NCBI RefSeq assembly: GCF_035594765.1
Contig: NC_085843.1
Location: 268,933,971 to 268,997,970, forward strand
Reading direction: 5' to 3'
Length of the DNA: 64,000 bases
Origin: Anolis carolinensis
Taxonomy: Eukaryota
The notes under the pieces were generated by a model. The model was not told the origin of the DNA. It saw only the letters and a program-made list of their open reading frames with translations, and searched no databases. Made by a program: the position numbers and the translations under genes. Positions 4,666 through 33,761 of the stretch are shown here, piece by piece; the first letter of the stretch is position 1; each line of letters opens with the position of its first letter.

Positions 4666-4741
4666 GCATCCAACTCTCTGAGGTAATAGAGCTAAAGCTG
4701 CTTCTGCATATCATGGTCAAATTTTCTCATTCAAGACTTAC

Positions 4742-5619: not shown

Positions 5620-5695
5620 CTATAGGAAAAAGAATGAAAATTAAAACTAACTCCACATCTATCTTTTGTACTATCATTCCAAGCATCTATTGGAC

Positions 5696-14297: not shown

Positions 14298-14636
14298 CAG
14301 TAGAGTCTCACTTATCCAACATAAACAGGCCAGCAGAATGTTGGATAAGCGAAAATGCTGGATAATAAGGAGGGATTAAGGAAAAGCCTATTAAACATCA
14401 AATTACATTATGATTTTACAAATTAAGAACCAAAACAGCATGTTTTACAACAAATTGATAGAAAAAGCAGTTCAATACATGGTAACGTTATGTAGTAATT
14501 ATTTATGACTTTAGCACCAAAACATTGCAATGTATGGAATGCATTGACTACAAAAACATTAACTACTAAAAGGCAAACTGTGTTGGATAATACAGAATGT
14601 TGGATAAGCGAAGGTTGGATAAGTGAGACTCTACTG
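14298..14636. mobile_element. Tc1/mariner MITE, same family
   Basis: Same TIRs, TA TSD. Confidence 0.9.
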
Positions 14637-15029
14637 TATTACAATAATTTTATATTAGAAAAATCTTTGCAGATGTACCTTTATGTTTCAATTTTCACAT
14701 TCCTGCGACATGAAATTGAACTGTTGGTTAATATGGTTGGCACCTCTGTGCTTTTACTTTTGCTAAAAGCCTACATTTCTGTTTCCACGCACACAACTAA
14801 ATCTGCAACCCAATGTGTAGTCACATCAGCAACTGAGCTGCACAACCAGAGTCTGACTGCCAATTTTGGCACGGATACATCACTTGAGAATGCGCAATTT
14901 CACATCCACAATACTGAACTGAATGCAAATATTTCACAATATTAAATAATGTCCATCTGCTTCCATGATGGAACTTCCACATGCATAACAAACAAACAAA
15001 ACAGAATATGGGTCACTAGCCCACATTTC

Positions 15030-15173
15030 NNNNNNNNNNNNNNNNNNNNNNNNNNNNNNNNNNNNNNNNNNNNNNNNNNNNNNNNNNNNNNNNNNNNNNN
15101 NNNNNNNNNNNNNNNNNNNNNNNNNNNNNNNNNNNNNNNNNNNNNNNNNNNNNNNNNNNNNNNNNNNNNNNNN
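15030..15173. other. Assembly gap (144 N)
   Basis: N run. Confidence 1.
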
Positions 15174-15862
15174 ATGTGCATGCTCTGGGGGTCTCCTCAC
15201 AAAGAACAAATGAGGGATGTTATGCTCCATTCCTTTAAACTCCTTTTTTTTTTTTAGTTTCTATGCTTTTAGGCTAATGTTGTACACAAGGTAGGGCCAT
15301 AAGGCAATGGAGGACAACTTCAAGTTTATTGTGAGATATACGTCTATTTTTACTAGAAGCAGGCAGTTGCTCAACCAGAGTACAATATAGTGCCATATGT
15401 AAGCCCAGCTGTTCATAAAAGTTAATGGGAGAGAATGAAGAATAAAGGAATAGATGCCTCTGAGCAAACACTTGGCCCAGGCTTTTGTGATCAGTAGGAG
15501 AGCTTGAATACATTTTTACAAATAGCCATCAAGAAATCTCTGATCAGTAGTCAAGCCAATGCCACAAACACTTCCACAAAATGGGATCAACTTCTAAATG
15601 TTATTCAAGGACAAGCATTATTTTGCCTAATTAGTCTCAATTAGGGAAGAGCATTGAATCATCTGAATGTACCAATGTGTTGACTCCTCCTTTGGAAGTT
15701 GTGAATAAGCAAATGGATTCAAAACCATTGTCCCAAACCATTGTCTCAAGCTTCTTAGTATCTGCTATGAGACAAGCATTGATTAATATCTTTCTTGATC
15801 TACTATGAACCAAGTAGAAATTTGCAAGGTGGTCCCATGCTACCTTGCTGTGAGATACTCAC

Positions 15863-16080
15863 CCCTGACCATCCAAATGGCAAGAACTGCCCTTCAACCC
15901 AGTTTTCTCCATTGACATATACAAGTCCAGCAATCATGATGAAGACCCAAACAACCAGATTAATCACATTGAGGATGTTGTTGAATCCAACAGAGTTCTT
16001 CACACCCAGGGCAACAATGATTGTTACAACAACTGCAATCACCAGAGCTAGGAGGTCTGGATATGATTCTTCACCTTTAC
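15863..16080 (-). CDS. SLC7A14: SLC7A14 coding exon 3 (GKGEESYPD...PFGWSG)
   Basis: Acceptor TTTTTGCAG at 16082/16081, donor GTGAGT at 15862; 218 nt. Confidence 0.97.
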
Positions 16081-17072
16081 CTGCAAAAAGGAAAGGGAAA
16101 GAAAACATTCAATGGGACTTTGAACAATTTAGAAGCACAGGAACTGGCTGCCAACTTCAGAAATCCTTAGGAGCTTCCATACGAAGGATTCACTGAGGAA
16201 TCTCCGTCCTTTGTTTATTCAGATTTCATGGGGGATTTTCATGATTCCGGGATGCATTCAGTCTTTGATGTACTCAAAGTAAGCCCATTGCAGTCAATGG
16301 GATGTATGTTGGTCATGGTTAACAAGTCACATTGATTTAAATGGATTTACTTATATGACCAAGTGTAGCTCAAAGATGCATGTAATTTAAATTTGAAATT
16401 GGGTCATGGTTAGGACCAACTCTAGGTGAGGAATTCCTGAACAAAGTGCCGTCTGATGGACTCCATGCCATCTAAGATGTAGTCCAACACATCTAGTGGA
16501 AATTAGGTGTGAGGAAGCTGCTCTAGGGCACTGTAGAAATCTAAAAGGTGAATGGACCAAGACACCGGCATTCTTTGGAGCACCAAAATGGGTTGTTTTT
16601 AGGTTGGGGGTCTGTGGTGGTCTCTGCCATTGTACTTTTAATCTGATATCAGCTGTCAAGGATTGTCCATATTTTACCTGAAGGGAGATACTCAGATGTT
16701 TCCTTCTTCAGGAGACATCAGTATTCATGGAAGAAAGCCATCAATGGGCTATTCAACATATTCTCATCCATCACTGGTCACTTTTGGACATACAAATCCA
16801 ATGGAGACCAGCTGAATTACCTTCCATGCTGACTGGTATTATTAAAGCAAGACACATAGCACTTGAAACTCTTAACTCTCTTTGGGTTTCAACCATAATT
16901 TAGTTGTCTCTTGATGCCAAACAGGAAATGTAGGAAATGTAGAAGTTGTTATATTTCAAGTGCCAGAATCTGGCTGGGAGTAGCAATCTTTAACCCCCCC
17001 CCCCAAAGTTCTGCCTAACAGTTGCAATCTGGCATTGAGACAATCACTGCATGCATTCAAGCTCCATCTCAC

Positions 17073-17309
17073 CCAGCCCGTTCAAGGTCCCGACGCTGTC
17101 AATCATCCAGTGGCTGATGGTGTGATTGGCCAAGGAGTCGAACATGCTGCTGAGAGCGCTGGCGCCTGCGGCTGTGCCAATGAGATATTCCAGGATGAGG
17201 TTCCACCCAATGAAAAATGCCACAAACTCTCCCACCGTGACGTAGCTGTAGGTGTAGGCAGAGCCAGTGGTCTTCGGGACCCGCACACCAAACTCAGCAT
17301 AGCAGACCC
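17073..17309 (-). CDS. SLC7A14: SLC7A14 coding exon 2 ([19 protein letters not shown]...TLNGL-G)
   Basis: Acceptor TTCAG at 17311/17310, donor GTGAGA at 17072; 237 nt; CAT-family motif CYAEFGxRVPxxGSAY. Confidence 0.97.
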
Positions 17310-17357
17310 CTGAACAGAGAAAAACAAGGAAAACTGTGAAACTATAGCAATGTATAG

Positions 17358-17614
17358 GAGCCCCGGTGGCCAAGTGTGTTAAAGCACTGAGCTGCTAAAC
17401 TTGCAGACCGAAAGGTCCCAGGTTCAAATCCCGGGAGCAGAGTGAGCACCCGCTGTTAGCTCCAGCTCCTGCCAAACTAGCAGTTCGAAAACATGCCAAT
17501 GTGAGTAGATCAATAGGTACCGCTTCAGCAGGAAGGTAACAGCGCTCCATGCAGTCATGCCAGCCACATGACCTTGAAGGTGTCTACGGACAACTCCGAA
17601 AAAAAAAATCCCAA
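17358..17614 (+). mobile_element. Sauria SINE, 3'-truncated with A-run
   Basis: Same head and body as the 13380 copy; TSD CAATGTA(T/C)AG (17348-17357 / 17615-17624). Confidence 0.85.
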
Positions 17615-17943
17615 CAATGTACAGATCAAAACACTAATAAAAAGAATAAAAAGACTCGTCCAGAAATCTAGCAGAAGATCAACATTCTGTCATTGAAATT
17701 TGCTTTGATGATTTGTTTTTGCAATGTAACCCCCTTGAATTAACAGTACAGTTTAACAATCTTCTGTCCAAAATGTTTGAGGCCAAAAGTATTTTGGATT
17801 TCACATATGTGGAAGATTTTGGAATGCCCGTATTTGCATAAACATAAACGGTTGCATTGTAACTATGTTTTAATGTTTGATTTTATAGATTATTTAACTA
17901 TGAGCCATGCCTTGAGCCAAAAGCAGAGTCAGTAATACATAAA

Positions 17944-17993
<50 letters not shown>

Positions 17994-18008
17994 CATTATT
18001 ATTATTAT
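17944..18008. repeat. (TTA)n microsatellite, probably a LINE tail
   Basis: Direct reading. Confidence 0.95.
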
Positions 18009-19159
18009 AATATAAGATATCCTGGAGGTGGAACCCAAGTTTAAACATGAAATTCACTTATGTGTCATATACATCTTGTACACATAATATTTAATTATTT
18101 TGTGGATGAAATGAATTTTGTGTACACTGATCCACCAGAAAGCAAAGATGTCACTATCTCAGTCACCCTTGTGGACAATTTTGGAGTATTCCAGAATTTT
18201 GGATAAGGGATAATGAGCCTGCATTTGCTTATAGTGATTTAAATGTTGGACTAGGGCTCTGGGATAATAGGGTGAGATGGGTGACCTTGGGCAAGTCTCA
18301 TTCTCTCAATTTCAGAGGAATTTCCTCTGAATAAACGTTGCCAAAAAAACCCCCAGGTTTTCCATGAAATAACAACAATGGCATTTGTTCACATTTGTTC
18401 ACATTCTTCCCTCCCGCTTTCTTTTGCTATCTCTGTTGTCTCCCTATTCTGTTTTTACTGCATGCTCTGAAAGAATAGAGGTTTGTCTTGGCTGTTTTTA
18501 AACTGATGTTACTCTGTGTACTGACTAAATTCAGACTGTGACTCCTTGACCAAGGTTTGATAGCATACACTAAATAAGAAAACTGGTAACTTTGTCCACC
18601 AAAAACAGCAGAAGAGAAAGGGGTGGAAGGAGAGGCCTTATCTTTGTATTATTCCTTTGTCCTCCCTCTGCCAACCTCTTGTCCAGAGAAAAACAGGACA
18701 CAAAGTGATAAGATAATAGCAGCCCTGACACTTTCCAGTCAATTGCCAGTCAACTCTCTCTGGACTAGAGAGACTGGGTGAGCAGGTGGCAAGGAGAGCA
18801 ACACGAAGGCTAGTCTCCATTGGGAACTCTTGCTAAGATGTGCGCCTTGGCATATGCCCATCAATGCCAACCCCTGATGCCAGCAATTGGCAATTATTTA
18901 TCATACTGACATTCCAACTTCTTTCTATGAAACAACTCAAATGTGACAATCATGGAGATCAGGTATCCAGGTAGTGAGTGACTGCATCTAGAATTGTTTA
19001 ACTTCCAAAAAGAATTATGCAATTTCAGTCTATATCTTGGGATCAAGATATTTACTTGTACTGAACATTATTCCTTTCTCAAGGTTGTCATAATACTTGC
19101 ATTCAGTGGGTTGTTGTATGTCTTTTGGGCTGTGTGGCCATGTTCCAGAAGTATTCTCT

Positions 19160-19200
19160 CCTGACGTTTCGCCCACATCTATGGCAGGCATCCTCAGAGG
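19160..19200 (-). ncRNA. Minimal type I hammerhead ribozyme motif (Penelope pLTR), intact core
   Basis: CCU-CUGAGGA-U-GCCUGC-CAUAGAU-GUGGGC-GAAAC-GUC-AGG: core CUGANGA/GAAA/NUH, helix II, and short helix I (CCU/AGG). Confidence 0.75.
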
Positions 19201-19217
19201 CTATGTGTGCCACACAG

Positions 19218-19258
19218 CCTCTGAGGATGTCTGCCATAGATGTGGGTGAAACGTCAGG
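19218..19258 (+). ncRNA. Minimal type I hammerhead ribozyme motif, intact core
   Basis: CTGAGGA 19221-19227, GAAAC 19248-19252, GTC 19253-19255. Confidence 0.7.
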
Positions 19259-20825
19259 AGACAATACTTCTGGAACATGGCCACACAGCCCAAAAGACAT
19301 ACAACAACTCTGTGATCCTGGCCATGAAGGCCTTCGACAACACTTGCATTCAGTGTTAGAAATATCTTTGGGTAGATAGTAGAGTTTGGTTAGAACTTTG
19401 AAAAGCTACCTTTTTGACTATAACTCCCAGAATCCTCTAGTCATGCTGGTTGGGAGTTGTAATCCAAAACTGTAATTTCCCCAGGTTCTGGGACTGACCC
19501 ATGGCTGACACCTTCTCTGGTTACTAGCTATTGATATTTGGTGATAAGATACTATTTAAATTTCTAAAGGTGCCCAGGGTTTTACTCAGCACTTACTTTG
19601 TTGAAAATAATACTTGTTCATAGAAGTATCATATTCACAAGAGAAAATGCCGGTTTCTGTGGAGAAAATGTTGAGTTTGGTGCAAAACAACTATGTGCAA
19701 ATTTTACAGAGATTAAGTCTCAATTTGTGAACTTTCTTGTAGTGGGAAGAACATTGCTAAAATTACTCATTGCTTTTTTTCAAGTAGAAAATTAGTGAGG
19801 AAATACATCTTTGCTGGAAATCATCAAAAGTATAGTTTTTCTGTTTGGGAGCTTTAACAACACTTGGTTTAGAACTTTGAAGGATCTATATGGAATAGTA
19901 ATACAATATTCATTTTCAAGGGATCACTGTAATTGGCCTTTCTGAACAACCCCTCTCCAGGTCGATAATAGTAGATTTGTTGCTTATTCAAAGCTGTTTC
20001 TTCTCCTCTGTTTCTAACAGGAATGTTGTTTTTAAAGTTGATGGCAGCAATACCAGTCTAGACTGCCAATAATACCACGTAAAAGAAGAGTACGTGCTCA
20101 CAAATGTTGTTTTCTTCTGGAGTTTTAAAAAACAGGTATGACAGACATTGAGAGCATGCCAATTCAGTGATTTTCCAAGGACACAAATTGGACTATTTTT
20201 CTGGTTGACATTTTCTGATTGCATTTCTAGCACAGTAAATTCTGAAAGTGTATGCTAGGACACACTCATCCTGCCATGAGATAACTTCTGCCATGGTGTA
20301 GAAAATTACTTAAATAATTCAAGGCTTTCATGAAACTACAGAAGATCCACTGATACATGAGCCTGGCTATAAATGCATCTCAACAGAAGAGGCAGCGAAA
20401 AGAATTTTGGCCAGAGAACTGCAGTCCTTTTCAGAGAGCATTTCGGTGGCTTCCTGCCAGAGCTGGGGTGGCATTAAAGTAAGGGGTAGACCCACACAAT
20501 TATTTCTGTTTCATATTTGCACACGCGCATGCACATTCTCTCTTCATATGAACCTTTGTTGTTTGTTTTTTGTGCCTTCAAGTTGACTCCAATTTCTAGC
20601 ATATCATAGGATTTTCTTGGCAAGATTCATTCAGAGGAGGTTCCTCTGAGCCTGAGAGAGTGTGACTTGCCCAGAATCACCCTTTGGGTTTCCATGGCTG
20701 GGAGGGGATTCAAATGATGGTCTCCTGAGACACAATTTCAATGTTCAAACTACTACAACATGCTGACCCAACACACCATTTATTCATTCACACAACTATC
20801 TTCATACACAACACCCTCAATTTAT

Positions 20826-20945
20826 CCACATCTCCAGGGGTGGCCTGTGAATCTGCTTGAACCCTTATCCCAGACTTAAAAGGAGCTATCCAAAGTTACT
20901 AACCTTATTACCAAACTGGTTCAACACCTTGGGTTGTTTGTAATA
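20826..20945. repeat. Fold-back element with divergent RE1-like pair (right part degenerate)
   Basis: AAAAGGAGCTATCCAAAGTTACTAA (to 20902), 17-nt spacer, TTCAACACCTTGG (from 20920). Confidence 0.5.
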
Positions 20946-20961
20946 AAACTCTGAGTGGATG

Positions 20962-21212
20962 TATTGTCAAAGGCTTTCCTAGCTGGGATCACAGGGTTGT
21001 TGTATGTTTTCCGGGCTGTATGGCCATGTTCCAGAAGTATTCTTTCCTGACATTTCTCCCACATCTATGGCAGATATTCTCAGAGGTTGTGCGGTATGTA
21101 ATTGGCCTTTCTACCTCACAACCTCTAAGGATGCTTGCCATAGATGTGGGCGAAATGTCAGGAGAGAATACTTCTGAAACATGGCCATACAGCCTGGAAA
21201 ACATACAACCCA
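20962..21212 (-). mobile_element. Short palindromic Penelope-like insertion
   Basis: Same arms, tail on the left; flanking duplication CTGAGTGGATG at 20951 and 21213. Confidence 0.88.
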
Positions 21213-21671
21213 CTGAGTGGATGCATTGTCACACTGCTATGGAAAACCCTGGCTACCCTAACACTTATTCCCCCTTCTGTCTCACAGAGTCTCTTTCCTG
21301 AAAAAGTCTCCATGATAGGGATATGAAGAGTGACAGTGGCAATACTCTCATGAAGAAATGAACAAGCAGAAGTATCTTCCATGGTTGCTCACCATGTCCC
21401 TGAAAAAGCTGCAAACATGCAAATAAAGGCTGGCAAACAACTTCTAAAGGGTATGGTAAGCAGCAGTGGTGGCATCCTCACAAATGAATGAAAGAACAAG
21501 CAGGAGTGCCCACCTTCACCTCTAATTGCCACATCTTGATTTTTTCACAATTTGATGTGTTGCTGTTTCCTATTTTGCATCTATTGTTGGTTAAATCTGC
21601 AGATATGAAGTGGTCCACTGTATATCCTTAGGTATGCAGTTATGCTTGATTTCCAGTGTATGATTCAATGT

Positions 21672-21691
21672 GTTGTCGAAGGCTTTCATGG
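21672..21691 (-). mobile_element. Ultra-short Penelope-like tail insertion
   Basis: GTTGTCGAAGGCTTTCATGG is the reverse complement of the element tail; flanked by TTCAATGT duplication (21664-21671 / 21692-21699). Confidence 0.7.
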
Positions 21692-23643
21692 TTCAATGTT
21701 CACTTGAGCATGCAACGGACCTTTCCTTTTGGAAACCACAGCAGCGTGAGCAAGTGCCAAAGGGATGCCCCATTCCAAATCCAGAAGTTGCTGATGGCTT
21801 CTATGTCAGTGGATGATTTCAGGTTTCAAGCTGAACTATAATAAATATATCTCACAGGATGAAACATGTCTCCCAAACAAGTCCAGCACTTTGGACAACT
21901 CCTTTACAGCTAGTATTAAAAGCAGGAATGGCTTCACTCCCCAACTGACATGGAAGCCACCAGGTGCCATTCACTTGCCTGCAACATCACCAAAACATAT
22001 CTTTGCCCAACATCCTGTAGCTGACAAGCCCAAGTGTAAATACATTATACATGTGTGTATGCATTTTTCTGGTCATTCTAGAGGTTGGTATTCTCTTCCT
22101 CCATACTCAAAACCCCCGAAATGGAGGGTTTCCATTCACTGTTGTGATAATTGCCCCACATAGCCATACTATTGTTGTGGGGGGATTGGAGAAACATCTG
22201 GTTTTGTCTCCATAGCTAGATGTGGACTGATGAGATAGATATTCATTGAAACATCAGTAGGACTCAGCAGAACTTGGAAAATGTCCTTGTTCTGCATCTA
22301 GCTGAGGAAATCCTCAGACTATTCTCTTTTTTTCTTCCAGCTTCCACCAGCAACAGAATGGTCATGGGAGGAAGCATCACAATGTAATGGTGTTGACAGG
22401 GACTCACTGTGCATACAGATCTCTTCGTCATGTAAGTCTCAACCTCTGTGTCTTCACTTACATTTGAGTACTCATGTTTTCATGTCACTTTATATTAACA
22501 ATTTAAAAAGAATGCGCGTGTGGAACTTATGGATTAGTGAGTAGCAATGATTACTTCTCCAAACATTTGTGATTCCCTATTCATTCTCCCCCAGCATTTT
22601 CAGCTGCAATATATTTGCATTTAATATGAACAAAAGAATGCTTTCTCTGCTCCCTAAGAAATGGTCTTTGTAAGTCCTTTAGCTCCCTCAAACTACTTTT
22701 TCTGGAACTGTCCCTAGAAAAGTATTCTGTGCACTTTTCTTTTCTATCGGGATTTGGTTACGTGACCCCCCCCCCCCCCGATACCAAAATTAATGGACCC
22801 TCAATTTACATTAGATACAATGGCATAGTAAAATGACATCCCTTATGCAAAATGGCAAAATCGAAGCATTTTTTTGACATTTTTTGGAATATTGGTTGAA
22901 TCCCTCAATACATAATTTGTGGTTATAGAGGGATGACTGTATCAAAGACACCTTGTCAATTACACAAGTTCTGAATCTGTAACTAGTCTGACATCTCTAG
23001 AGGGTGATTGATTCCACTGCAGCTGTTTTATCTTACCTCTGTTTTTGTGATAAAGCTTCTGGATGTGCAAAACTGCACACGCACACACACATATGCTGGT
23101 GATATAAATACTTTCATTATTGAAGGTCTTGTATATTTCATGCATTTTTAAATGTGCTCAGATAATAAAAGCTTTCAAAGGGATATTTGAGACTTCAATT
23201 TCTATTACACATCTCAGAGATGTGGAAGAAAGAAAGAAAAATACGCCCCACCCCACAAGCAACCCTCCAATAGTTGACTTGGATATAAAGTCATTTCATC
23301 AAAGCTGATTAAAATTGCATGTAAGCTGCAAATGCAAGAGACCAGTGGGAAAGTACATGCCTGAAAGATTTATGAAACAGATGCCGGCATGAAGACAGGT
23401 ATTCTGTTCCAGATTTTGACTTGAAAAATTGTAGTGGTGTTGGCTGCTAACTGCACAGACAGGTGAGGTATGAAGAAAGACTCTCCTTGACATGCATAAT
23501 AATAGCCTACCCAGAGAAATATAAATAATATATGACAAGCTGGCTAGAATTCCCATGATAATTTTCAGATGAACTACTTGCATCAGTTCCTTATATACAA
23601 ACGACACGCAGAATCCAAAGAGGGCAATGTTTGCCTGCTTGTT

Positions 23644-23818
23644 GTGCTCTCTGCCATGTCAGTGGGGCAATGAATAGCCTCAGGTTTAGGATAGCTTGAA
23701 AGGAGCTGTCTGAGGTCCTGAACTTCTTTGGAGGCTAGGGTTAGCACCTTGGATAGCTCTTGTAAAACCTAGAGTAAAGCTTGGAATGGATTCACTGTTT
23801 CAGTGGCATGGGAGACAC
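23644..23818. repeat. Old fold-back (MITE-like) element with divergent RE1-like pair, best-preserved copy
   Basis: Minus-strand TTCAGGACCTCAGACAGCTCC (23722-23702), 17-nt spacer, plus-strand GTTAGCACCTTGGATAGCTCT (23740-23760); flanks are degenerate inverted repeats. Confidence 0.65.
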
Positions 23819-26800
23819 CATGCCAAATATTGTACAGTGGCTGTTGTTGCTGTTGTTGTCTGCCTACAAGTCATTCTTGACCTATGGCGACCCCCATGAT
23901 GAAGCAATCATAGGGTTTTCTAGGGCAGAGAGTGTGTGATTTGCTGGGTCAGCAGCTACTCATTTCCCTTTCCTGTGGCATTTCCCTTAACTATACTCCA
24001 AGATGCTCATGTAGAAGAGGAGGAACTGGTCTCCACAGGAAGAGAGAGTGAGCTGAAAGGCTCTTGTGCTCTGACTATTATTTCATAAGCTCATTTGGAT
24101 ATCAGCTGTGGTACTCTCTTCATTTATAATAAGTGGGAAATACCAGCTGAATGCCATTATGATCAGCACGCTGGGAGTATGCACGGCTCCTTAAAATGTA
24201 TAATTGGACTTATCTCTGCCCCAAGGGACCAACAATAAAAAAAACTGGGAAATTACAAAGGAAGGGAAGACAGGTGACAGAAGGGGAAAACAAAGGAAGA
24301 ATCTGCATTTCTTTTAATTAGACAAAACAATTGCCATGAGGTGGGCCATACACTTCTGTGGTCCTTGGAATCTTTCCCAATTGTGTCTATGTGTAGCACA
24401 TGTAGGTGCAAAGGAAGAAGGAAAAGAACCCTAGAAGCTCTCATGAATTGTTCTTCTGCAAGTCATGATGTCCTGTCTTCCTTTAATGAAAAACAAGAAA
24501 AGAACAAAAAACAGACCACTTCTTGTTTTAATAAAGACTAATTGAGAAAATTGTTGGGATACAACATTAATGGTTCATGGGGAAGACTGATTTCCAAGCC
24601 TATTAAAATTGTCTGTCCTTATAAGTGCTTTTAGAAGATGTTTCCAGTATGTCTGTTGGCATGCACAAGATAGGATGGCATCCCCTGGATGACTTTAAAT
24701 GACAGTTGAAATATTGCCTCATGGGACCAGAAGAAATTGACAGGAACAAGAGTATAGATGCTAAGGCCACACTGGGCAGAGTTATAGCAAAAGGATCCAG
24801 GCTGAAGTCAGCTCTTGGCACGGAGGAAGGAAAAAGACCAAATTTTTTCTATTTGATGCCTACTGTCCACATTTAGAATTCTGGAAAGTGATTGGCTATG
24901 CCAAAGGTGAGGAATTTTTGGCCATCCAGGGTTTTTTTTTGGATGTCAGCTCTCTGAATTTCTAGTAATTATAGCCAATGATAAGGGACTGTGGGAGTTG
25001 TAGTACCAAATATCAAAAATATTTTTGTATTTTGAACTCAGTTTGCAGCAACTGAAGTAAGCTGTGGATGAAGGAGGGAAATGGAAAGGGATAAGAGAAA
25101 CCGGGATGTTTTGAAGAAAGTGGGATGGCAGAGGATTAACTGGGGTTATTTCGACCAAATCAGGACAGTTGGGAGATTTGTTTCACTGTCCAAGACTTTA
25201 AAATACTCATTCATTGACTGCAGATACCAGTATTCCTTAGTATGGAACCATGGCAGTGAAAGTGGAATCATAGTAATGTTTAATGTATAATACATGTAAT
25301 GTAATGTAATGTATAATGCAAAAGGCCCCCTGGGTTATATGCACCAGAGTCACAGATAGCAGCTTTTGAGATCATTTAACTGCAATTTGAAAATGTTTGC
25401 TTACTTTCCTTCTTAATTTTCTTTCTCCAGGTATGTCATGTTACATATATGATAGCTCCCAGAATTCCCAGCTAGCATAGACACTGACGGAAATTATAGT
25501 CCAAAAAAGCTGATTTTTCAAAGCTCTGGATTTTTTGTTGTTAGTCTTTGCTAGAGCAGACCCATTGAATCAATGGGATATATCAATGTATTGACTCCCC
25601 ATTCAACAATTAATTGAATGTATCTACTTAAATTGGGACTAACCAAGAGAACGCCAACTTATGACCTTTAAAAATATGTCACTGTGATTGGAAAGGGAAC
25701 AAAACAGTTATTTTCCTCCCATTAAAAATTTTATACACCATGAAAGAACTATTTTGCTCCCATTCCAATGATGGTGACATAATGTTAAAAGTTTGTGAAG
25801 TTACATAGCTAAGGTAACATCTTGCAAAATTTTCCTGAGCTACTATCCCAATGCCTTTGTCTTAGTAAAAGACAGGAAAATTCATTTTGGGTTCTCTTGG
25901 ATGAACCCAGGTTGATTTCCCCCCCTCCAACTCCTTTTCCCTTTATAAAACAACACAGATCTAATGCATCCCTGATGCCTTGAGGCTAGACATATCTGCC
26001 AGAAATCCAATTATTTTGCATCTAAGTCAATTTGTGTATGTGACAAGAATACAGTACTAGCTTACTGGACTATTAAATATTCTCAGAGGCAGAGAAGTTC
26101 TGCTGGAGATAATATTTTTTAATGACCCGAGCTTCTAGCAAGAGGACCTAACGTGGCACCATGACATTTCTTTGAATTAGGATTAGATTTGCCCAATTTG
26201 GCATAATTGTAGTTTTAGAAAATCAAAATCAAATAGTCCTGTGAAACAGCTGGTTGGTAATGGATATATGACAATTTACATCTCCTTCCCGCACTGCCTC
26301 AGCTCTCAAGTAACCTAGCAATATCTTCGCTGGTATGACATTGTTCTTGATAATATGTTTCAGGAACAAACAAACACAGCTGAATACTTGGGGCTTTCGT
26401 AGGACTGCCTACAACATTCTATTTATAACTTCAAAAATATTCTTTGATTCCTTGAAGCACGTGGGACATCAGACACATCTTTCTCACATCAACACTGATC
26501 CAGAAGTTACTGTTTATTTAGTCTTGGAGAAATTGCAGTATTGTCTTCATAATACTTTAAAATCTCACAAGATTCCTATGCACATGGAGATTAACCTTCT
26601 GTTAGTGAGATGTACAAACCTAAGTCCAACATATGACTATGTACAATGCGTCTTCTTTATAGTTGCATTCTCTTGCTTCCACCACTTTGAGGAAAGCACC
26701 CCCTACCCACTGAGCTCACTCTTTTGCTATGATATTTCCTCTCCATGGCCATTCAGTGGCTGGTGAAGAACCAAGAGCATCAGAGATGCTTCTGGCAATG

Positions 26801-27214
26801 TCTTCTTACCAAACTGAAAGACAATTACATCCTCTGCTGAGACTTCCAGAAGACCCCCATGGATCTCAATGGATGATGCTATGAGCAGGATTTGAACCTT
26901 GGTTTCTTTAGTCCAACACACAAATCGCAATAGCTAATTGAGATACACTCTACAATATAGGATTTTAGCTAGCAACCACAACTTGTCAAAGTCATTTTGC
27001 AAGTGAACATGATGGAACAAGAATGACAAACTTTGTCTTCTATCATGGTTGTTGTGCACCTTCAAGTAATTTCTGAACTCATGGAGATACTAAGGTGACC
27101 CTTTCAAAAGGTTTTCTATAACAACACAATGGAAACCATACCACCCTTCATGTAGTCTGGCTGTGCTATTAGGAAGAGTGAGGTTAACATCTCAGATGGC
27201 AGATCTCAGGTGTC

Positions 27215-28085
27215 TCTATGGAATCTTAGTAGATCACAAGCTGAACATGAGTCAACAATGTGATGTGGCAGCTAAAATAACCAATGCAATTCTAGGCTTT
27301 TTTTCATGTCAGGAGAGACTTGAAAAACCAGAAGTCTCTTCTGGTGTGAGAGAATTGGCCGTCTGCAAGGACGTTTCCCAGGGGATGCTCTGATGTTTTG
27401 ATGTTTTGACCATCCTTGTGGGAAGCTTCTCTCATGTCCCCGCATGGAGTTGGAGCCGACAGAGGGAACTCATCCGTGCTCTCCCCGGGTTGAATCTGAA
27501 CCGGCAACCTTCAGGTCAGCAACCCAACCTTCAAGTCATCAGTCCTGCCAGCACAAGGGTTTAACCCATTGTGCCACTTGGGGCTCCATTCTAGGCTGTA
27601 TCAACAGGAGTTTAGTGTTTAGATTGGGAAAATAATAGTACTATTCTATTCCGCTTTGGTTAGACCTTACCTGGAATACTGTGTCCAATTCAAGAAGGAA
27701 CATGACCAGAGAAGGGTGACCAAAATTATCAAGCCCTGTGAGGAATGGTTTGGGGAACTGTGTATATATAACCTGAAGACGAATAGGTCAAGAAGGGACA
27801 ATATAGCCATGTTTAAATATGTGAAAGGATACTGAAGACGAACCAGGTTTGTTTTCTATTGCTCTAGAAACTAGGACAGAGCAGTAGATCCAAACCAGAA
27901 GAGATTCTACCTGAATATTAGGAAAGAATTTGTGATGGTGACAACTATTTGGCTATGGAATCCATTGCCTTGGATTGTGGTGGAGTCTCCTTCTTTGAAG
28001 GCTGTTAAACTGAAACTGGATGTCCATGTGTTGGAAGTGTTTTGATTGTGTATTTCTTCATGGCAGGGGATTGGACATGTTGGTG
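27215..28085 (+). mobile_element. Decayed CR1 LINE 3' fragment (interrupted by a SINE)
   Basis: GILVDHKLNMSQQCDVAAK..NAILG / CINRS typical of CR1 ORF2. Confidence 0.85.
27299..27587 (-). mobile_element. Anolis SINE2-type (Vingi-tailed) SINE nested in CR1
   Basis: Head GGAGCCCC..GTGGCACAATGGGTTAAA, tail ..CTCCTGACATGAAAAAA; 10-bp TSD ATTCTAGGCT. Confidence 0.82.
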
Positions 28086-29194
28086 GACAGAGTGGACACC
28101 TTAAAGTGCCAGAGTTATATCACTTACCCTGCTTTGCTAGTGCTCTCTACATCTCAATATCTGCCACCTGAAATGGCTGCTTCTCGGTGTCTAATGATAC
28201 ACTCAGCCCTACTAGCAGTTCTTGAAAATGGGACCCTGAGAACTGAGCCCAAGTGCTGTTTATATCCCAGATGTCCATGGGAGATGCTGCCAAAAGGTTA
28301 AGCAGAAGGTGAAACAAAAGATTGGGTTACATCTCTTTTGTAATTTTGTAGCTCCAGCCTCCCTTTCGCTTTCCAAGAATGTGTTGCTGTTATAAATAAC
28401 AAAAACTCAAGAATGATCAAAAAGGGAGAAATGGCTGTGGAGACTATAAAAATATATCGGGATGTTTTTCCTTGCGGGTATGAAAGCAAATCAAGATGAA
28501 AGAAGAAAAGGAACAATCAACACTTCAAACTTGCAATAATCTTAAAATTTTAAAACATAGCCCCCCGTGGAGAAGATACAATATCTTGAATCATTTTGTA
28601 TATTGCTTTAGATTATAGTGCGGTCATGTTGTTTGTACCAAAGCCATTTCTGAATGGAAAACTACCAAGGTCAGTCTGGTTAGAATATATGTGTTTCATA
28701 AACATAAGGGATGTGATATAGCTCCAGAGCAGACCACATCCTCTGCATATAGATGATCCCAGGTTCTGTCTCCAAAATCTCCAAGTATATCAGCAAAGGA
28801 TTGTGTTTGAAACCCACAGGGAGCTGTTTCCAATTCTTGTAGATGGTATTCAGAATTCAATTTATGTTTCTCATTAAATTGTAAGAAAAAACGCAACCCA
28901 TACTGATAAGAACCCTGTAAAAGTAACTTATTGAATTGGCCACTGCCTTGAATTGCTTTTAAAGAGAGAACCTTGGGATTGAAGGACGCAATAAGACTTG
29001 AAAAATTCTTGTTTGTGTGACTCTGAAATTGCCTTAAAAAGTAATTTTTAAAAAATGATTAGAAAACACGGCTTGTGGCACCAGGTAGGTGATTTCATTC
29101 CCACTTGTTGTGCTAGTTTTCAGATGTAATTGTGTTATACCCATGTTACCCCACTTCTCACAAAAGTAACTGGCTGGTGGCTCTCATATCATTG

Positions 29195-29300
29195 AGATGG
29201 TGAATTTGGTTTGAGCTTTAACATCAACTTTAAAGGACTAGTGCTGAGCCTACATTTGGGGAAACAGGACTCAGCACCTGTGATAGGACCTTTAAAGTCT
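29195..29300. repeat. Fold-back element with RE1-like motif (left motif partly deleted)
   Basis: CTTTAAAGG..GTGCTGAG / CTCAGCACCTGTGATAGGACCTTTAAAG inverted arrangement; left arm GTGAATTTGGTTTGAGCTTTAAC resembles the other copies. Confidence 0.45.
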
Positions 29301-29411
29301 GCTTAGAGGAAAGATCTGTTTTTGTAAACACAAATTCAGCTGAAACGTTTTATGGTATTGCATTTCCAATTAATGTTTCACATATTGATTAAATGCATTA
29401 AAAATGATCTT

Positions 29412-29634
29412 GTGGTGTAGTGCATTGAATGTTGGACTGCAGTTCTAGAGACCAGAGTACAAAGCCCTGCTCAGCCATAGAAATGCACTCAGTGAACTTG
29501 AGCAAGTCATATTCTCTTAATCTCAGAAGAAAGCAAAAGCTTCTGAACAAATCTTGCCAAGAAAGCTTCATGATAGGCTTGCCTTAGGGTTGCCATAAAT
29601 TGGAAACAAAAACAAAAAAAAGGCACACAACAAC
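29412..29634 (+). mobile_element. Older tRNA-derived squamate SINE with (CAA)n tail
   Basis: TGGTGTAGTG..GTTGGACT..TTGAGCAAGTCA..AAATCTTGCCAAGAAA..TTAGGGTTGCCATAA..AAGGCACACAACAAC; related copies at ~18235-18375(+), 20560-20765(-), 23850-23950(-), 50935-51115(-), 54158-54357(-), 60545-60700(+). Confidence 0.65.
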
Positions 29635-29898
29635 ACTTCACAATTAATATTTCACATACTGTTTCAATACATCAAAAACTCAAAAGCCTCTTTTCAAGGG
29701 CTTGGCTTGGAACATTTTGTCTGTGTGCTACCATTGAACTGTAAAGGACAATTGCTGGGAATAAACAGACTCACGTGGAAAGCACAGACCAATTTATACC
29801 CTTGGCTAAATACAACCAAGGAAAGCAGGACTCAGTGACATCTGTTTTACACTTCATTACTTCTTTCTTCTGTTTTCAGGTACTGAACTAGCCCAGTA

Positions 29899-30559
29899 CA
29901 GCCAGTCTCCAAGTTACGGACAAGATTTAGGTTTGGTCTTAAGTTGAATTTGCTTGTAAGTCAGAACAGGCACATTATTTAATTGCAACTCCATCCAAAT
30001 GCATATATTTCTTTGCTTTGAACAGCATAGGGAAGGGTTAACACCCTTGTGTTGTTTGTTTTGCTATTTGTGCCCCTGTTCAGAAGATTTCACCTCACTT
30101 TCTGTCCCTATGATAATAGGGTTTTGAAAATTTTGGTTTGTTGTGGAAACAATTATTTTTTTATCATGTCAGAAGTGACTTGAGAACATACTCCAAGTCG
30201 CTTCTGGTGTGAGAGAATTGGCTGTCTACAGAGACATTGCCCAGGGGACACCCAGATGTGTTACCATCCTGCTGGGAGGCTTCTCTCATGTCCCTGCAAG
30301 CTAGAGCTGACAGAAGGGATTGGAACTGGCAACCTTCAGGTCAGCAACCTAACCTTCAGGTCAGCAGTCCAGCCGGCACACTGTGGCTCACACGGATTGG
30401 TGATAAAGCTTCAGTTGATACACCTTTCCCCCATGATAACTTTTTCAGGAGTGAATTTCTCTTCTAAGGGATAGATTTTTCTGACTTCCTGTTGTCTCAA
30501 CCCCATTCTTAACTATGAGTCATTTGCAAGTCAGATGTTTGTAACTTGGGGACTGCCTG
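29899..30559. mobile_element. Tc1/mariner (Tigger-like) non-autonomous element with nested SINE
   Basis: TIR CAGCCAGTCTCCAAGTTAC / GTAACTTGGGGACTGCCTG, TA TSD. Confidence 0.8.
30153..30385 (-). mobile_element. Same SINE family, nested in a mariner-type MITE
   Basis: Similarity to 27299-27587. Confidence 0.75.
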
Positions 30560-30726
30560 TATACTGTTTCTAGAGGTGTAAATGTCTTCATCCTCCCTTT
30601 TTTTTGTTTCTTACATCTGGTATTTGGAAAATTATGATCACTGTGCATGGTAGTTCCACTGAACTATCAAAGCTATTATTGACACAACAACATTGTATGA
30701 CACAGCAAACAAGATAGATATGCTGG

Positions 30727-30727
<1 letters not shown>

Positions 30728-30772
<45 letters not shown>
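30728..30772. repeat. (TTA)n microsatellite adjoining an L2-like 3' end
   Basis: Direct reading. Confidence 0.95.
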
Positions 30773-30773
<1 letters not shown>

Positions 30774-31128
30774 ATTACTTTATTTCTATCCCACCTTTCT
30801 CTCCACAGGGACTCAAGGCAGATAACCATCATATGGCACAACCTAATAAAAGTTTAAAATAAGACAACGCTAATACAGATAGAAACATCCTTTCTCTCTC
30901 AAAACTCCCATTATCCTCCCTTTGGTCTACCAACGTGTTATCAATGGAGAATGGACCAAAATACAGTTTGTATTGCATTACTAGGCCAATTGCATGAACT
31001 CAGAACATAAGTGGGTTTTTGCTGGATCAGGTTAAATAAGATCTGGCATATCTAATACAGCTTTCTGCTTATGGAAGCCCAAATCTTGGTTAGTCTTAAC
31101 TAATCAAGTCCACTGAATCAACTGATGA

Positions 31129-31137
<9 letters not shown>

Positions 31138-31164
<27 letters not shown>
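31138..31164. repeat. (TG)n microsatellite
   Basis: Direct reading. Confidence 0.95.
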
Positions 31165-31586
31165 ACACAAATTTCACTGATTCAGTGTGTTTGCTTCAGT
31201 TAAGACAAATATTTAGGATCCATACTACAGTGTCCAACCAACTGCCTTGAGGAAGCCCTATAGCAGGATATGCAACATCTCTACTTTCTCCTTTGCATCA
31301 CTGGTGCATAAACACATGGAATTTCTGATAGTGGAAGTGATGTGCAGTCATTCAGAGTAGAAGCTGAAGCTAGCCCTAATCTTCTTTTGAACTGTCCATG
31401 CAGACTGCCATTAGTGGATGAGACTTGGGAATGCATTTACACTATCAAATTAATGCAGTCGGACACCACCTTAACTATCCCTTTGGAAGAGAAGGCTAAA
31501 GACCTTGTAAAACTACAGCTTCCATGATTTGATAACATTGGGCCATTTGACAGTGGAAAAGGCTGGGGATTGCAGGATGCATCTTT

Positions 31587-31738
31587 GGGCCCTTTCAGAC
31601 AGGCCCTATATCCCAGGATCTGACCCCAGGTTTTCTGTTTACCCCAAATTATCTGGCAGTGGGGACTCATATAATCCAGTTTAAAGCTGAAAATCTGGGA
31701 TCGGATCCTGGAATATAGGGCCTGTCAGGAAGGGCCCC
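31587..31738. mobile_element. Harbinger-like palindromic MITE
   Basis: GGGCCCTTTCAGACAGGCCCTATAT / ATATAGGGCCTGTCAGGAAGGGCCC long inverted termini. Confidence 0.65.
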
Positions 31739-31830
31739 TAGTTATGTTATTGATATTTAATGTATATAGAGGTACATTAAATGAAGGCCAAAACATGCTT
31801 TTAGAACCTCATGTAGCCATCTCCCTAGAT

Positions 31831-31965
31831 CAGTGGTTCTCCACCTGTGGATCCCCAGGTGTTTTGGCCTTCAACTCCCAGAAATCCTAACAGCTGGTAA
31901 ACTGGCTGGGATTTCTGGGAGTTGTAGGCCAAAACACCTGGAGACCCACAAGTTGAGAACCACTT
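31831..31965. mobile_element. hAT fold-back MITE
   Basis: CAGTGGTTCTCCACCTGTGG / CCACAAGTTGAGAACCACT, TSD C(C/T)(C/T)TAGAT. Confidence 0.8.
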
Positions 31966-32500
31966 CTTTAGATCCTATTTTTTCCTTGAGCTTGACATTT
32001 TATATGAAATATTTCATAAATTATGAAGCCCCCAGAAGTTTCCTTTAATATAGAGCTCTTGTGGAGATGTTTGTTGACAAATGCAGCTTCATAACAGTGC
32101 AAGATTATATTGATCTCATCACTTCCGTCATTACATAATACTTATTTAATTTGCTAAATGACTACAGTGAGTCAGAAAAGAGATACAGAATACTTACATA
32201 ATTAGACTCAGTTCAGTTTGGAAGTGACCACGGGGTCCAATTTATTTATTACATTTCTTGGGTCATTGCTATTTAATTGGGACTCTAATAACATCTCTCA
32301 AAAAGCACTTTAAATATCAGCATCATTGTTAATGGCAAATGCCAAAATTGTTTTAATGGGGAGAATGTACCAGCAACGTCTGACATGTAGATGAACCAGT
32401 GTTTGCTGTTGTGTTGCCTTCAAATCATTTCCCAATTATGGCAACTTTAAGGCAAACCAGCCATTCGTTTAGATAACCTGCAAAGATTAATCAAGTAAGC

Positions 32501-32718
32501 GGGTGTATCTACGTTGTAAAATTAATACAGTTTGAGACCACTTTAACTGCCGTAGCTCAATACTGTGGAATTATGGGAATTGTACATGTCCATTATCTTT
32601 AACTTTCTTTGTCAAATAGAACTGGCGCCTTGCCAAACTACAAATCTCAGGATTCCATAGCATTGATCCAAGTAGTTAAAGTGGTGTCAAACTGCATTTA
32701 TTCTACACTGTAGATGCC
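32501..32718. mobile_element. Harbinger-like MITE
   Basis: GGGTGTATCTAC..CAGTTTGAGACCACTTT / AAAGTGGTGTCAAACTG..GTAGATGCCC; related copies at ~33945-34142 and 39142-39312. Confidence 0.6.
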
Positions 32719-32767
32719 CTCAAGGAAGGAAGCAGTGAACACCGTGTAAATATGAATGTTAAGAATA

Positions 32768-33090
32768 CAGCAGAGTCTCACTTATCCAACATAAACGGGC
32801 CGGCAGAACGTTGGATAAGCGAATATGTTGGATAATAAGGAGGGATTAAGGAAAAGCCTATTACACATCAAATTAGGTTATGATTTTACAAATTAAGCAC
32901 CAAAACATCATGTTTAACAACAAATTTGACAGAAAAAGTAGTTCAATATGCAGTAATGCTATGTAGTAATTACTGTATTTACGAATTTAGCACCAAAATA
33001 TCACAATGTATTGAAAACATTGACTACAAAAATGCGTTGGATAATCCAGAATGTTGGATAAGCGAGTGTTGGATAAGTGAGACTCTACTG
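32768..33090. mobile_element. Tc1/mariner MITE, same family
   Basis: Same TIRs, TA TSD; near-identical to 7222-7544. Confidence 0.9.
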
Positions 33091-33583
33091 TAGTAAGTTC
33101 ACTGTTAAAAAGCAAACAGCTCAATAAATGTGGTTAAAGATCCAATATGAATTCAGCCAGCAAACAGAAATAATGGCTGAATGAGCGGGATCATTGCTTG
33201 CAATAAAAGTAAGCACAGAAATGGCTTCAAGCAGCTACTTTTTACATAAACAATAAAAGATTTAAATTGAACTTGATAATATGCATTTTATCAATACTAT
33301 CTATGTATTCCTGGCTCTGCTGTATTCAACGCAGCTGTGAACTTTAACATAAGCTTACAAAGGTGGATTTATCATAGGATGCTACAAATTACGTAGATTG
33401 AGAGAATAACCAAAGAAGGGGCATTGAGAATGAATAAAGAACTTATAGAAAAATGAAATGTTTCGGTGATATAATGTGAAATGTAGGGGGGCAGGCAGAG
33501 CATTACAGCTGATTTACAGTGGAGAAAAGGTGCAAGAAGGATAAAGATTGGGATTCAATATAGTATCATTATATTATATAGAA

Positions 33584-33761
33584 TAGGCATGGGCAAACTT
33601 TGGCTCTACAAGTCCCACCATTCCTAACAGCTTCAGGCCCCTTCCTTTTCCCCCTCAGCCGCTTAAGCGGCTGAGGGGGAAAAGGAAAGGGCCTGAAGCT
33701 GTTAGGAATGGTGGGAGTTGGAGTCCAAAACACATGTAGAGCCAAAGTTTGCCTATGCTTG
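33584..33761. mobile_element. hAT fold-back MITE
   Basis: TAGGCATGGGCAAACTT / AAGTTTGCCTATGCTTG termini, 8-bp TSD ATATAGA(A/G). Confidence 0.8.

What the first reader, a model, noticed from the sequence alone, without database searches (positions are those of the whole stretch)
23644..23818. Ancient fold-back repeat carrying back-to-back REST/RE1 sites, five copies within a neuronal gene
Seen: the same architecture recurs at 4570-4629, 5748-5807, 20882-20940, 23702-23760 and, partly deleted, 29230-29290. Each has a shared arm (..GAAT..AGCTTTA..AAAGGAG), a minus-strand RE1-like 21-mer, a 17-18 nt spacer and a plus-strand RE1-like 21-mer. The 23644 copy is a degenerate ~175-bp palindrome. By eye the RE1-like parts are better preserved than the arms. 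Established: REST binds TTCAGCACCnnGGACAGCnCC to silence neuronal genes outside neurons, and SLC7A14 is neuron-enriched. Inference: an old palindromic DNA-transposon derivative seeded paired REST sites that were retained in this gene, forming a multi-copy silencer array. From recall only, amniote Harbinger-type repeats such as UCON29/Chompy are REST-bound; identity with this family is unverified.
Basis: partly seen in the sequence, partly recalled or inferred. Interest (0 to 1): 0.8.

Follow-up and report, generated by a model that had tools for sequence, protein, structure and literature searches.

The report
Decayed lizard MITE with REST-like motifs
Six worn-out copies of an old ~200-bp palindromic transposon, whose founder carried two near-perfect REST-repressor motifs, lie in introns of the green anole's neuronal gene SLC7A14, but the motifs have drifted at the same rate as the surrounding introns, so they look like relics and not a working silencer array.

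Summary
The window is Anolis carolinensis SLC7A14, on the minus strand. It holds six copies, not five, of a ~200-bp palindromic non-autonomous DNA transposon (MITE). All six are intronic, between 4.5 and 29.3 kb. The copies align well beyond the motifs (nhmmer E 1e-7 to 1e-3 pairwise).

The family arm consensus contains TTCAGCACCTTGGATAGCTCC. This matches the canonical RE1 at 17 of 18 specified bases. It fails the published degenerate NRSE consensus only at position 15 (T where C or G is required).

The silencer-array reading is not supported.
- Orthologous copies exist in A. sagrei (5 of 6) and Sceloporus (4 of 6).
- RE1 half-site positions differ between the two anoles exactly as much as neutral intron does: 88.7% versus 88.9% identity, against 95.8% in exons.
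- Lineage-specific deletions have removed RE1 halves.
- REST-irrelevant spacer positions are kept as well as REST-critical ones.
- No arm now matches the degenerate consensus. The best copy, 23633-23831, is one mismatch off in each arm.
- The only full RE1 in the window is an isolated site at 55486, outside any copy.

UCON29/Chompy identity could not be tested and is not supported by the literature I read. Genome-wide copy number and enrichment near neuronal genes could not be tested here.

The parts
4498..4708 (.). MITE copy c4522, in the intron just downstream of the large SLC7A14 exon. RE1-like 21-mers at 4570-4590 (-) with 4 mismatches and 4609-4629 (+) with 3 mismatches.
   Evidence: nhmmer; motif scan. 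Orthologous in A. sagrei and Sceloporus; the right motif is largely deleted in Sceloporus.
5679..5873 (.). MITE copy c5696, in the ~490-bp intron just upstream of the large exon. RE1-like 21-mers at 5748-5768 (-) with 6 mismatches and 5787-5807 (+) with 3 mismatches.
   Evidence: Orthologous in A. sagrei (88%) and Sceloporus. The Sceloporus copy keeps a clearer terminus, CTGGTGGCTC.
20829..20969 (.). MITE copy c20844, main part. RE1-like 21-mers at 20882-20902 (-) and 20920-20940 (+), both badly decayed. A younger SINE interrupts the right arm.
   Evidence: Orthologous in Sceloporus; not found in A. sagrei.
20970..21212 (.). Younger SINE inserted into the right arm of c20844. It is not part of the family. 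Its 19-bp target-site duplication lies at 20951-20969 and 21213-21231.
   Evidence: Sequence. Contigs of related species B and C join 20950 directly to 21213 (table 8).
21232..21257 (.). Distal end of the right arm of c20844, beyond the SINE.
   Evidence: The arm HMM hits 21212/21213-21254/21257.
21779..21973 (.). It has the best-kept termini: GATGGCTTCTATGTCAGTGG ... CCAACTGACATGGAAGCCACCAG. RE1-like 21-mer at 21882-21902 (+) with 3 mismatches. The left motif at 21843-21863 is decayed.
   Evidence: Orthologous in A. sagrei, where the left motif carries a 12-bp deletion.
23633..23831 (.). RE1-like 21-mers at 23702-23722 (-) with 2 mismatches (C6G, G12A) and 23740-23760 (+) with 4 mismatches. 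Each arm is one mismatch from the degenerate NRSE consensus.
   Evidence: Orthologous in A. sagrei, where a ~1.2-kb insertion splits it at 23689/23694, and in Sceloporus, where deletions have removed most of both motifs.
29171..29309 (.). MITE copy c29174. The left motif at 29234-29250 (-) has a 6-7 bp deletion specific to A. carolinensis. The right motif is at 29270-29290 (+) with 4 mismatches. The distal right arm is lost in A. carolinensis but kept in A. sagrei.
55486..55506 (+). Context only: an isolated near-canonical RE1 (TTCAGCACCTTGGACAGCTTC). It is the only exact match in the window to the degenerate NRSE consensus and is not inside a detectable MITE copy.
   Evidence: The arm HMM matches only over the motif itself.
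3376..35014 (-). Context only: the SLC7A14 coding region. Exons lie at about 34691-35014, 17062-17319, 15860-16081, 9571-9750, 6124-6340, 4740-5636 and 3376-3693. All six MITE copies lie in its introns.
   Evidence: 100% identical to the A. carolinensis locus L007.

Best explanation
These are six neutral relics of one old family of non-autonomous cut-and-paste DNA transposons (a palindromic MITE of about 200 bp).

Shown:
- The family's arm runs from the central loop outward. It reads as a near-canonical RE1-like 21-mer, then TTTAAAG, a variable middle, and a terminal block of the form CCACTGACATGGAAGCCACCAGCTGC.
- Because the element is a fold-back, the single motif appears twice, back to back, 17-19 nt apart.
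- At least four of the six copies entered SLC7A14 introns before the Anolis-Sceloporus split, and a fifth before the A. carolinensis-A. sagrei split.
- No newer copies arose at this locus in any of the three iguanians.
- Since then, motif and non-motif positions have mutated and lost bases at the same rate as ordinary intron.

Inferred:
- The motif belonged to the master element and was not acquired copy by copy.
- Its better preservation among paralogs, and that of the terminal block, reflects conservation among the source elements and easier alignment near the centre. It does not reflect host selection after insertion.
- Today the copies most likely do nothing for SLC7A14. If REST regulates this gene in the anole, the isolated canonical RE1 at 55486 is the candidate.

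Open: whether the founder motif ever bound REST. Its consensus has T at position 15 of the right half-site, where 32 bona fide sites have C or G.
For: Family reality:
- Pairwise nhmmer E 1.8e-7 to 4.7e-3 over 90-170 bp, plus reverse-strand self hits.
- Profile hits at E 1e-38 to 1e-21.
- Flanks are unrelated.

Motif in the consensus:
- The consensus of 12 arms, and of 24 arms from three species, holds TTCAGCACCTTGGATAGCTCC.
- That is 17 of 18 specified canonical bases. My arithmetic gives a chance of about 1.6e-7 for a 100-nt arm on both strands.

Age:
- Contigs of three related species span the three copies in the 20.7-24.1 kb stretch that was laid.
- Orthologs are present in A. sagrei and Sceloporus.
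- Arms within a copy are as diverged as arms between copies (50% versus 51%).

Neutrality, A. carolinensis versus A. sagrei identity:
- Non-MITE intron 0.889 (about 28,800 sites).
- MITE outside the motifs 0.888.
- RE1 half-site positions 0.887 (126 of 142), plus 10 deleted positions.
- RE1 spacer and 3' positions 0.941.
- Exons 0.958.

Further points against constraint:
- Lineage-specific deletions remove motif halves in A. carolinensis (c29174), A. sagrei (c21793) and Sceloporus (c4522, c5696 spacer, c23631).
- Among paralogs, the half-site positions that PMC3320604 names as constrained are 74% conserved, against 76% for its weakly constrained positions. G12 and G17 survive in only 6 of 12 arms.
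- No arm fits NTYAGMRCCNNRGMSAG (consensus from PMC4430910; scan).
- RE1-like TE motifs that fit a consensus yet do not bind REST are documented for hERV class I (PMC1557810).
Against: - The motif block is more conserved among paralogs than the rest of the arm (75% versus 59%). I attribute this to source-element conservation and alignment, but did not prove it.
- Selection that acted only before the Anolis-Sceloporus split, or only on one copy, would escape the test. The pooled half-site sample is small (142 sites).
- All six copies lie in the 32-kb coding span and none in the other 32 kb of the window (binomial p about 0.02). This may hint at non-random placement.
- The two arms of c23631 remain one mismatch from the degenerate consensus, and REST tolerates some weak sites (PMC1557810).
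- No target-site duplication could be resolved, so the superfamily is unknown. The transposon nature rests on the palindromic termini and the dispersed copies.
Confidence: 0.78

Rival explanations
1. A partly live REST element. Most copies are dead, but the fullest copy (23633-23831) keeps two closely spaced sites, each one mismatch from the NRSE consensus. These sites still recruit REST weakly and add to repression by the canonical site at 55486.
For: Both arms of this copy are within one mismatch of the degenerate consensus. Below-cutoff RE1s can bind REST weakly or at high REST levels, and one gene can use several sites of different affinity (PMC1557810). In A. sagrei the two motifs of this copy are also largely kept.
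Against: Between the two anoles this copy's motifs carry 4 substitutions in 42 positions, the same rate as its flanks. In Sceloporus, deletions have removed most of both motifs. In A. sagrei a 1.2-kb insertion splits the element. One mismatch in A. carolinensis is G12A in the right half-site. The other arm has T at position 15, where the 32-site consensus allows only C or G (PMC4430910).
Confidence: 0.12
2. One reading: paired REST sites seeded by the transposon were retained by selection in this neuronal gene and act together as a multi-copy silencer array.
For: There are six copies within one neuron-enriched gene, all in the coding span. The consensus motif is near-canonical. The motif block is better kept among paralogs than the arms. 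TE-borne RE1s that bind REST are known in mammals (PMC1557810).
Against: Half-site positions evolve at the neutral rate. Motif halves are deleted in single lineages. REST-indifferent positions are kept as well as critical ones. No arm matches the degenerate consensus. One copy was lost in A. sagrei and two could not be found in Sceloporus.
Confidence: 0.04
3. The RE1 resemblance is functionally unrelated to REST. On this reading the conserved core is a feature the transposon needed for itself, for example an internal transposase or host-factor binding site or the tip of the hairpin, and it only happens to read like an RE1.
For: The conserved block extends beyond the 21-mer into AAGG and TTTAAAG. 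The spacer bases that REST does not read are as conserved as the rest. The consensus carries T at position 15, which is outside the NRSE consensus (PMC4430910). hERV class I elements are a precedent for RE1 look-alikes that do not bind REST (PMC1557810).
Against: A 17-of-18 match to a 21-bp motif is very unlikely by chance (about 1.6e-7 for one arm by my arithmetic), even allowing for thousands of repeat families. It is compatible with the best explanation, which leaves the ancestral function open.
Confidence: 0.3

Closest known systems
Transposon-borne RE1 families in mammals (LINE2, Alu, LINE1; Johnson et al. 2006, PMC1557810)
   Same: An RE1-like 21-mer forms part of a repeat family's sequence and is spread to many loci by transposition, including into neuronal genes.
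   Different: Those are retrotransposons in human and mouse, and several were shown to bind REST by EMSA and ChIP. Here the carrier is a palindromic DNA-transposon derivative in iguanian lizards, so the motif comes as a mirrored pair. Binding is untested, and the copies examined are decaying neutrally.
hERV class I RE1-like motif (PMC1557810)
   Same: A repeat family whose sequence fits the RE1 consensus closely.
   Different: That motif was tested and does not bind REST. The lizard motif has not been tested. It differs from the canonical site at one right-half-site base.
Non-autonomous DNA transposons (MITEs) of Anolis carolinensis (Novick et al. 2011, PMC3014272)
   Same: A short, non-coding element with inverted termini, in the same genome.
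   Different: The families catalogued there are mostly young (a few percent to about 20% divergence), and the authors note a near absence of ancient elements. This family is much older: arms are about 25-40% from consensus and copies are shared with Sceloporus. Short strings from its termini (GGTGGC, GCCACC, CAGCTG) do not occur in that paper's text, which holds its TIR tables.
UCON29 / Chompy
   Same: Old DNA-transposon-derived repeats linked with neural regulatory activity. UCON29 is a brain enhancer family (PMC6904449).
   Different: UCON29 is classified as Kolobok in Repbase (PMC5753468), and I found no statement that REST binds it. No copy of the present family was detectable outside pleurodont iguanians at this locus.

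Membership tests
MITE / non-autonomous class II DNA transposon | Short, non-coding element in several dispersed copies with unrelated flanks | tested here: met
   Six copies of about 140-210 bp. Similarity stops within a few bases of the terminal block CCACCAGCTGC. No Rfam hit.
MITE / non-autonomous class II DNA transposon | Terminal inverted repeats | tested here: met
   The whole element is a fold-back. Both arms end in CCACTGACATGG.AGCCACCAG(CTGC). Each copy hits its own reverse complement.
MITE / non-autonomous class II DNA transposon | Target-site duplication of a length typical of a superfamily | tested here: inconclusive
   Flanks of all copies in three species were inspected. The exact termini are blurred and no consistent duplication was seen, so no superfamily can be assigned.
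MITE / non-autonomous class II DNA transposon | Empty orthologous site in a lineage that lacks the insertion | tested here: inconclusive
   No copies in the Pogona, python or skink loci. Introns there are not alignable, so absence cannot be told from decay.
Functional RE1/NRSE (REST binding site) | Fit to the 17-bp degenerate consensus NTYAGMRCCNNRGMSAG built from 32 bona fide sites (PMC4430910) | tested here: not met
   0 of 12 arms fit. Two arms, both in c23631, are one mismatch off. The family consensus fails at position 15 (T). Only the isolated site at 55487-55502 fits.
Functional RE1/NRSE (REST binding site) | Purifying selection on the two half-sites (positions 1-9 and 12-17; PMC3320604) | tested here: not met
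   Half-site identity between A. carolinensis and A. sagrei is 0.887, against 0.889 for neutral intron and 0.958 for exons. Deletions occur in single lineages.
Functional RE1/NRSE (REST binding site) | REST occupancy or in-vitro binding | not testable with these tools
   No lizard REST ChIP data or binding assay is available here. No numeric REST matrix was available, so no PSSM or JASPAR score was computed.
TE-borne RE1 family (as LINE2-RE1 in mammals) | RE1-like motif is part of the repeat consensus and not acquired copy by copy | tested here: met
   The motif is the best-conserved block of the 12-arm and 24-arm consensus.
TE-borne RE1 family (as LINE2-RE1 in mammals) | Genome-wide excess of copies or intact motifs near REST-type (neuronal) genes | not testable with these tools
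   Only this locus of the genome was available. Contig depth over the cores is 10-18 times single-copy level at 80% likeness or more. This shows further paralogs exist but gives no count.
UCON29 / Chompy | Sequence similarity to the Repbase/Dfam consensus | not testable with these tools
   No repeat library was available.
UCON29 / Chompy | Amniote-wide distribution | tested here: inconclusive
   At the SLC7A14 locus, copies were found only in Anolis and Sceloporus. None was found in Pogona, Liasis, Tiliqua or the non-squamate loci L001-L003. One locus cannot exclude the family elsewhere in those genomes.

The most novel reading that the evidence does not exclude
A palindromic MITE family carried a mirrored pair of near-canonical RE1 motifs and spread thousands of potential REST sites through the genome of early pleurodont iguanians. 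That would be a lizard counterpart, driven by a DNA transposon, of the LINE2-driven growth of the mammalian REST regulon. Under this reading a minority of copies elsewhere, not the six examined here, would have been kept as neuron-restrictive silencers.
Probability: 0.15. Interest if true: 0.6.

Novelty: new member of a known kind. Interest (0 to 1): 0.25.

Why it matters
Transposons spreading ready-made REST sites is an established idea for mammalian retrotransposons. A DNA-transposon family doing so in a reptile, with the sites in mirrored pairs, would extend that idea to another vertebrate lineage and another transposon class.

The family and its RE1-like core are real and old. At this gene, however, the motifs are neutral debris. 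The finding should not be read as a REST silencer array in SLC7A14.

It is also a worked example of a general point. A striking match between a repeat's consensus and a transcription-factor motif, with many copies in a fitting gene, does not show function.

Tried and rejected
- Exact look-up of the window's own 258-aa exon product to fetch contigs of close relatives found nothing on record. The 294-aa product has an alternative start written as M. I could not give it by reference, and I did not type it.
- The first exon-based loci were of little use. L001-L003 align at about 80% in exons and 0% in introns. L004-L006 are short contigs of unknown squamates. None holds a copy.
- I tested whether the isolated RE1 at 55486 is a relic of a seventh copy. 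The arm HMMs match it only over the motif, so I cannot tell.
- The read-laying table of per-base differences was truncated and showed nothing for 22504-23958. It therefore could not be used for a footprint. I used the annotated loci of A. sagrei and Sceloporus instead.
- My first segment-wise identity test suggested the motifs were slightly better conserved (p 0.03). That came from non-homologous stretches aligned in the flanks. The BLAST-chained test against about 29,000 intron sites removed the effect.
- A loose fuzzy search for the terminal block gave mostly noise.
- Target-site duplications could not be resolved.
- A note-index search by sequence and by words gave no other record of this family.
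- Mortazavi et al. 2006 (PMC1581430) is not held.
- I did not scan metagenome contigs for the core. A 19-28-mer of so old a family would return mainly chance or contaminant hits.
- L007 contains letters at the window's masked stretch 15030-15173. I did not read or print them.
- Human and primate proteins appeared in the list. I did not fetch, save or compare them.

Full report
**Where we are**

The window is 100% identical over 1-15029 and 15174-45014 to the Anolis carolinensis locus L007 (GCA_035594765.1, CM069369.1). I did not read L007 at the window's masked stretch 15030-15173. The gene is SLC7A14 on the minus strand. The large exon is 95-97% identical in protein to bird, turtle and Varanus SLC7A14. 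The A. carolinensis protein maps to seven exons between 35014 and 3376.

**The observation**

A sixth copy lies at 21779-21973.

- With the 23630-23830 copy as sole query, nhmmer finds the other five at E 1.8e-7 to 4.7e-3 over 90-170 bp. It also finds reverse-strand hits, including the copy against itself at E 2.5e-6.
- The similarity is therefore not confined to the motifs, and the elements are fold-backs.
- Profile HMMs built from the copies, from the 12 half-elements and from 24 half-elements of three species find no seventh copy.
- The palindrome is badly worn. Arms of one copy are about 50% identical, the same as arms of different copies. No ungapped inverted repeat of 10 bp survives in the best copy. 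Its DNA hairpin energy is ordinary, z -0.99.
- The copy at 20829 is interrupted by a younger SINE (20970-21212) with a 19-bp target duplication. Contigs of two related species lack this SINE. The MITE arm resumes beyond it.

**Anatomy**

I aligned the 12 half-elements from the centre outward. The consensus reads in this order:

1. a short A-rich loop half;
2. TTCAGCACCTTGGATAGCTCC;
3. TTTAAAG;
4. a poorly conserved middle;
5. CCACTGACATGGAAGCCACCAGCTGC, after which different copies share nothing.

The 21-mer matches the canonical RE1 TTCAGCACCnnGGACAGCnCC at 17 of 18 specified bases. By my arithmetic that is about 1.6e-7 by chance for one arm. The back-to-back pair is just the mirror image of one motif.

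Against the published degenerate consensus NTYAGMRCCNNRGMSAG (from 32 bona fide sites; PMC4430910), the family consensus fails at one base: T at position 15, where C or G is required. C occurs there in three A. carolinensis arms. Two of those arms have T in A. sagrei, and a T arm has C in Sceloporus. The state therefore flips by ordinary substitution, and T is the majority.

**Age and spread**

- Contigs from three related species (about 4-10% diverged) span the three copies in the stretch that was laid, 20700-24100.
- In the annotated A. sagrei locus, five of six copies are orthologous.
  - One of these is split by a 1.2-kb insertion.
  - The sixth copy (c20844) is absent.
- In Sceloporus undulatus, four are recognisable: c4522, c5696, c20844 and c23631.
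- No species has a copy the others lack as a new insertion, so the family was already inactive.
- No copy is detectable in the SLC7A14 loci of Pogona, Liasis or Tiliqua, or in the non-squamate loci L001-L003 of unknown species. Introns there no longer align, so this is absence or decay. Amniote-wide age is not shown.
- Contig depth over the cores is 10-18 times the single-copy level at 80% likeness or more in three of the four runs, and about 4-5 times in the fourth, low-coverage run. More paralogs therefore exist elsewhere, but the tool's depth is not a copy number.

**Is anything being kept?**

Four independent checks say no.

1. I chained BLAST alignments of the whole window against A. sagrei.

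| Class of position | Identity | Sites |
|---|---|---|
| Non-MITE intron and intergenic | 0.889 | about 28,800 |
| MITE positions outside the motifs | 0.888 | 735 |
| RE1 half-site positions | 0.887 | 126 of 142, plus 10 deleted |
| RE1 spacer and 3' positions | 0.941 | 48 of 51 |
| Exons | 0.958 | 2,830 |

   Against Sceloporus the half-sites are 0.778 and the aligned intron 0.803. A quarter of the aligned half-site positions are deleted.

2. Deletions hit motif halves in single lineages.
   - A. carolinensis: c29174.
   - A. sagrei: c21793.
   - Sceloporus: c4522, c23631 and the spacer of c5696.

3. PMC3320604 names positions 1-9 and 12-17 as strongly constrained and the spacer and 3' end as weakly constrained. 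Among the 12 paralogous arms these two classes are 74% and 76% conserved. G12 and G17 survive in only 6 of 12 arms.

4. No arm fits the degenerate consensus. Both arms of c23631 are one mismatch off. The only exact match in 64 kb is the isolated site at 55487-55502 (4 hits within one mismatch against 0.51 expected).

However, the good block is wider than the motif, and the terminal block is also above the middle. I read this as conservation among the source elements plus easier alignment near the anchor. This is inference.

**Literature**

- RE1 spread by transposons is established for mammalian LINE2, Alu and LINE1, with binding shown. The same paper shows that hERV class I look-alikes fit the consensus and do not bind REST (PMC1557810).
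- Non-conserved human REST peaks are enriched in all TE classes, DNA transposons included (PMC4499139).
- I found no paper linking REST to a lizard MITE.
- UCON29 is Kolobok in Repbase (PMC5753468) and a brain enhancer family (PMC6904449). I found no REST statement.
- The anole DNA-transposon survey reports a near absence of ancient elements and no TIR-bearing Harbinger copies. Short strings from this family's termini do not occur in its text (PMC3014272).

**Verdict**

This is a real, old, palindromic MITE family with a near-canonical RE1-like core: six intronic relics in SLC7A14 that evolve neutrally. The transposon origin is supported. The retained silencer array and the UCON29/Chompy link are not.

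Several questions remain open for lack of a genome-wide search, a repeat library and binding data. These are the family's name, superfamily and copy number, whether the founder motif bound REST, and whether copies elsewhere were exapted. A first-stage note in this scan (s1-546014) reports paired RE1-like motifs in a GABRA2 intron of the same genome. I could not see that sequence, so whether it is the same family is unknown.

Noticed in passing
window 55486-55506 (+): An isolated near-canonical RE1 (one mismatch, at weakly constrained position 20) lies about 20 kb upstream of the SLC7A14 start codon. It shares the TT spacer and the T at position 19 with the MITE motif. No MITE flank is detectable around it.
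   Followed up: partly
window 20970-21212: A SINE with a 19-bp target-site duplication (20951-20969 and 21213-21231) is inserted into the MITE copy. Contigs of two related Anolis-like species (runs X10, X11) join the flanks without it, so the insertion is young.
   Followed up: partly
L008 23620-24834 (A. sagrei), at window 23689/23694: A ~1.2-kb insertion splits the A. sagrei ortholog of the fullest MITE copy. Contigs of run X14 break at the same point. Homology with Sceloporus is also disturbed there. I did not examine the nature of the insert.
   Followed up: no
window 19109-19341: An earlier first-stage note reports a Penelope insertion with hammerhead ribozyme motifs here. A whole-window Rfam search at gathering thresholds returned no family at all, so no hammerhead reached threshold.
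   Followed up: partly
window 5637-6123: The intron between the exon at 6124-6340 and the large exon varies widely in length. It is about 490 bp in both anoles (mostly MITE), about 2.1 kb in Sceloporus, 1.3-3.0 kb in python, skink and Pogona, and only about 100 bp in the non-squamate loci L001-L003.
   Followed up: no
window 48221-49117 (-): A 299-aa open frame with a reverse-transcriptase-like look (YADD motif) lies here, presumably a LINE fragment in the upstream region.
   Followed up: no
window 15030-15173: This is a masked N run. I neither read nor printed them.
   Followed up: no
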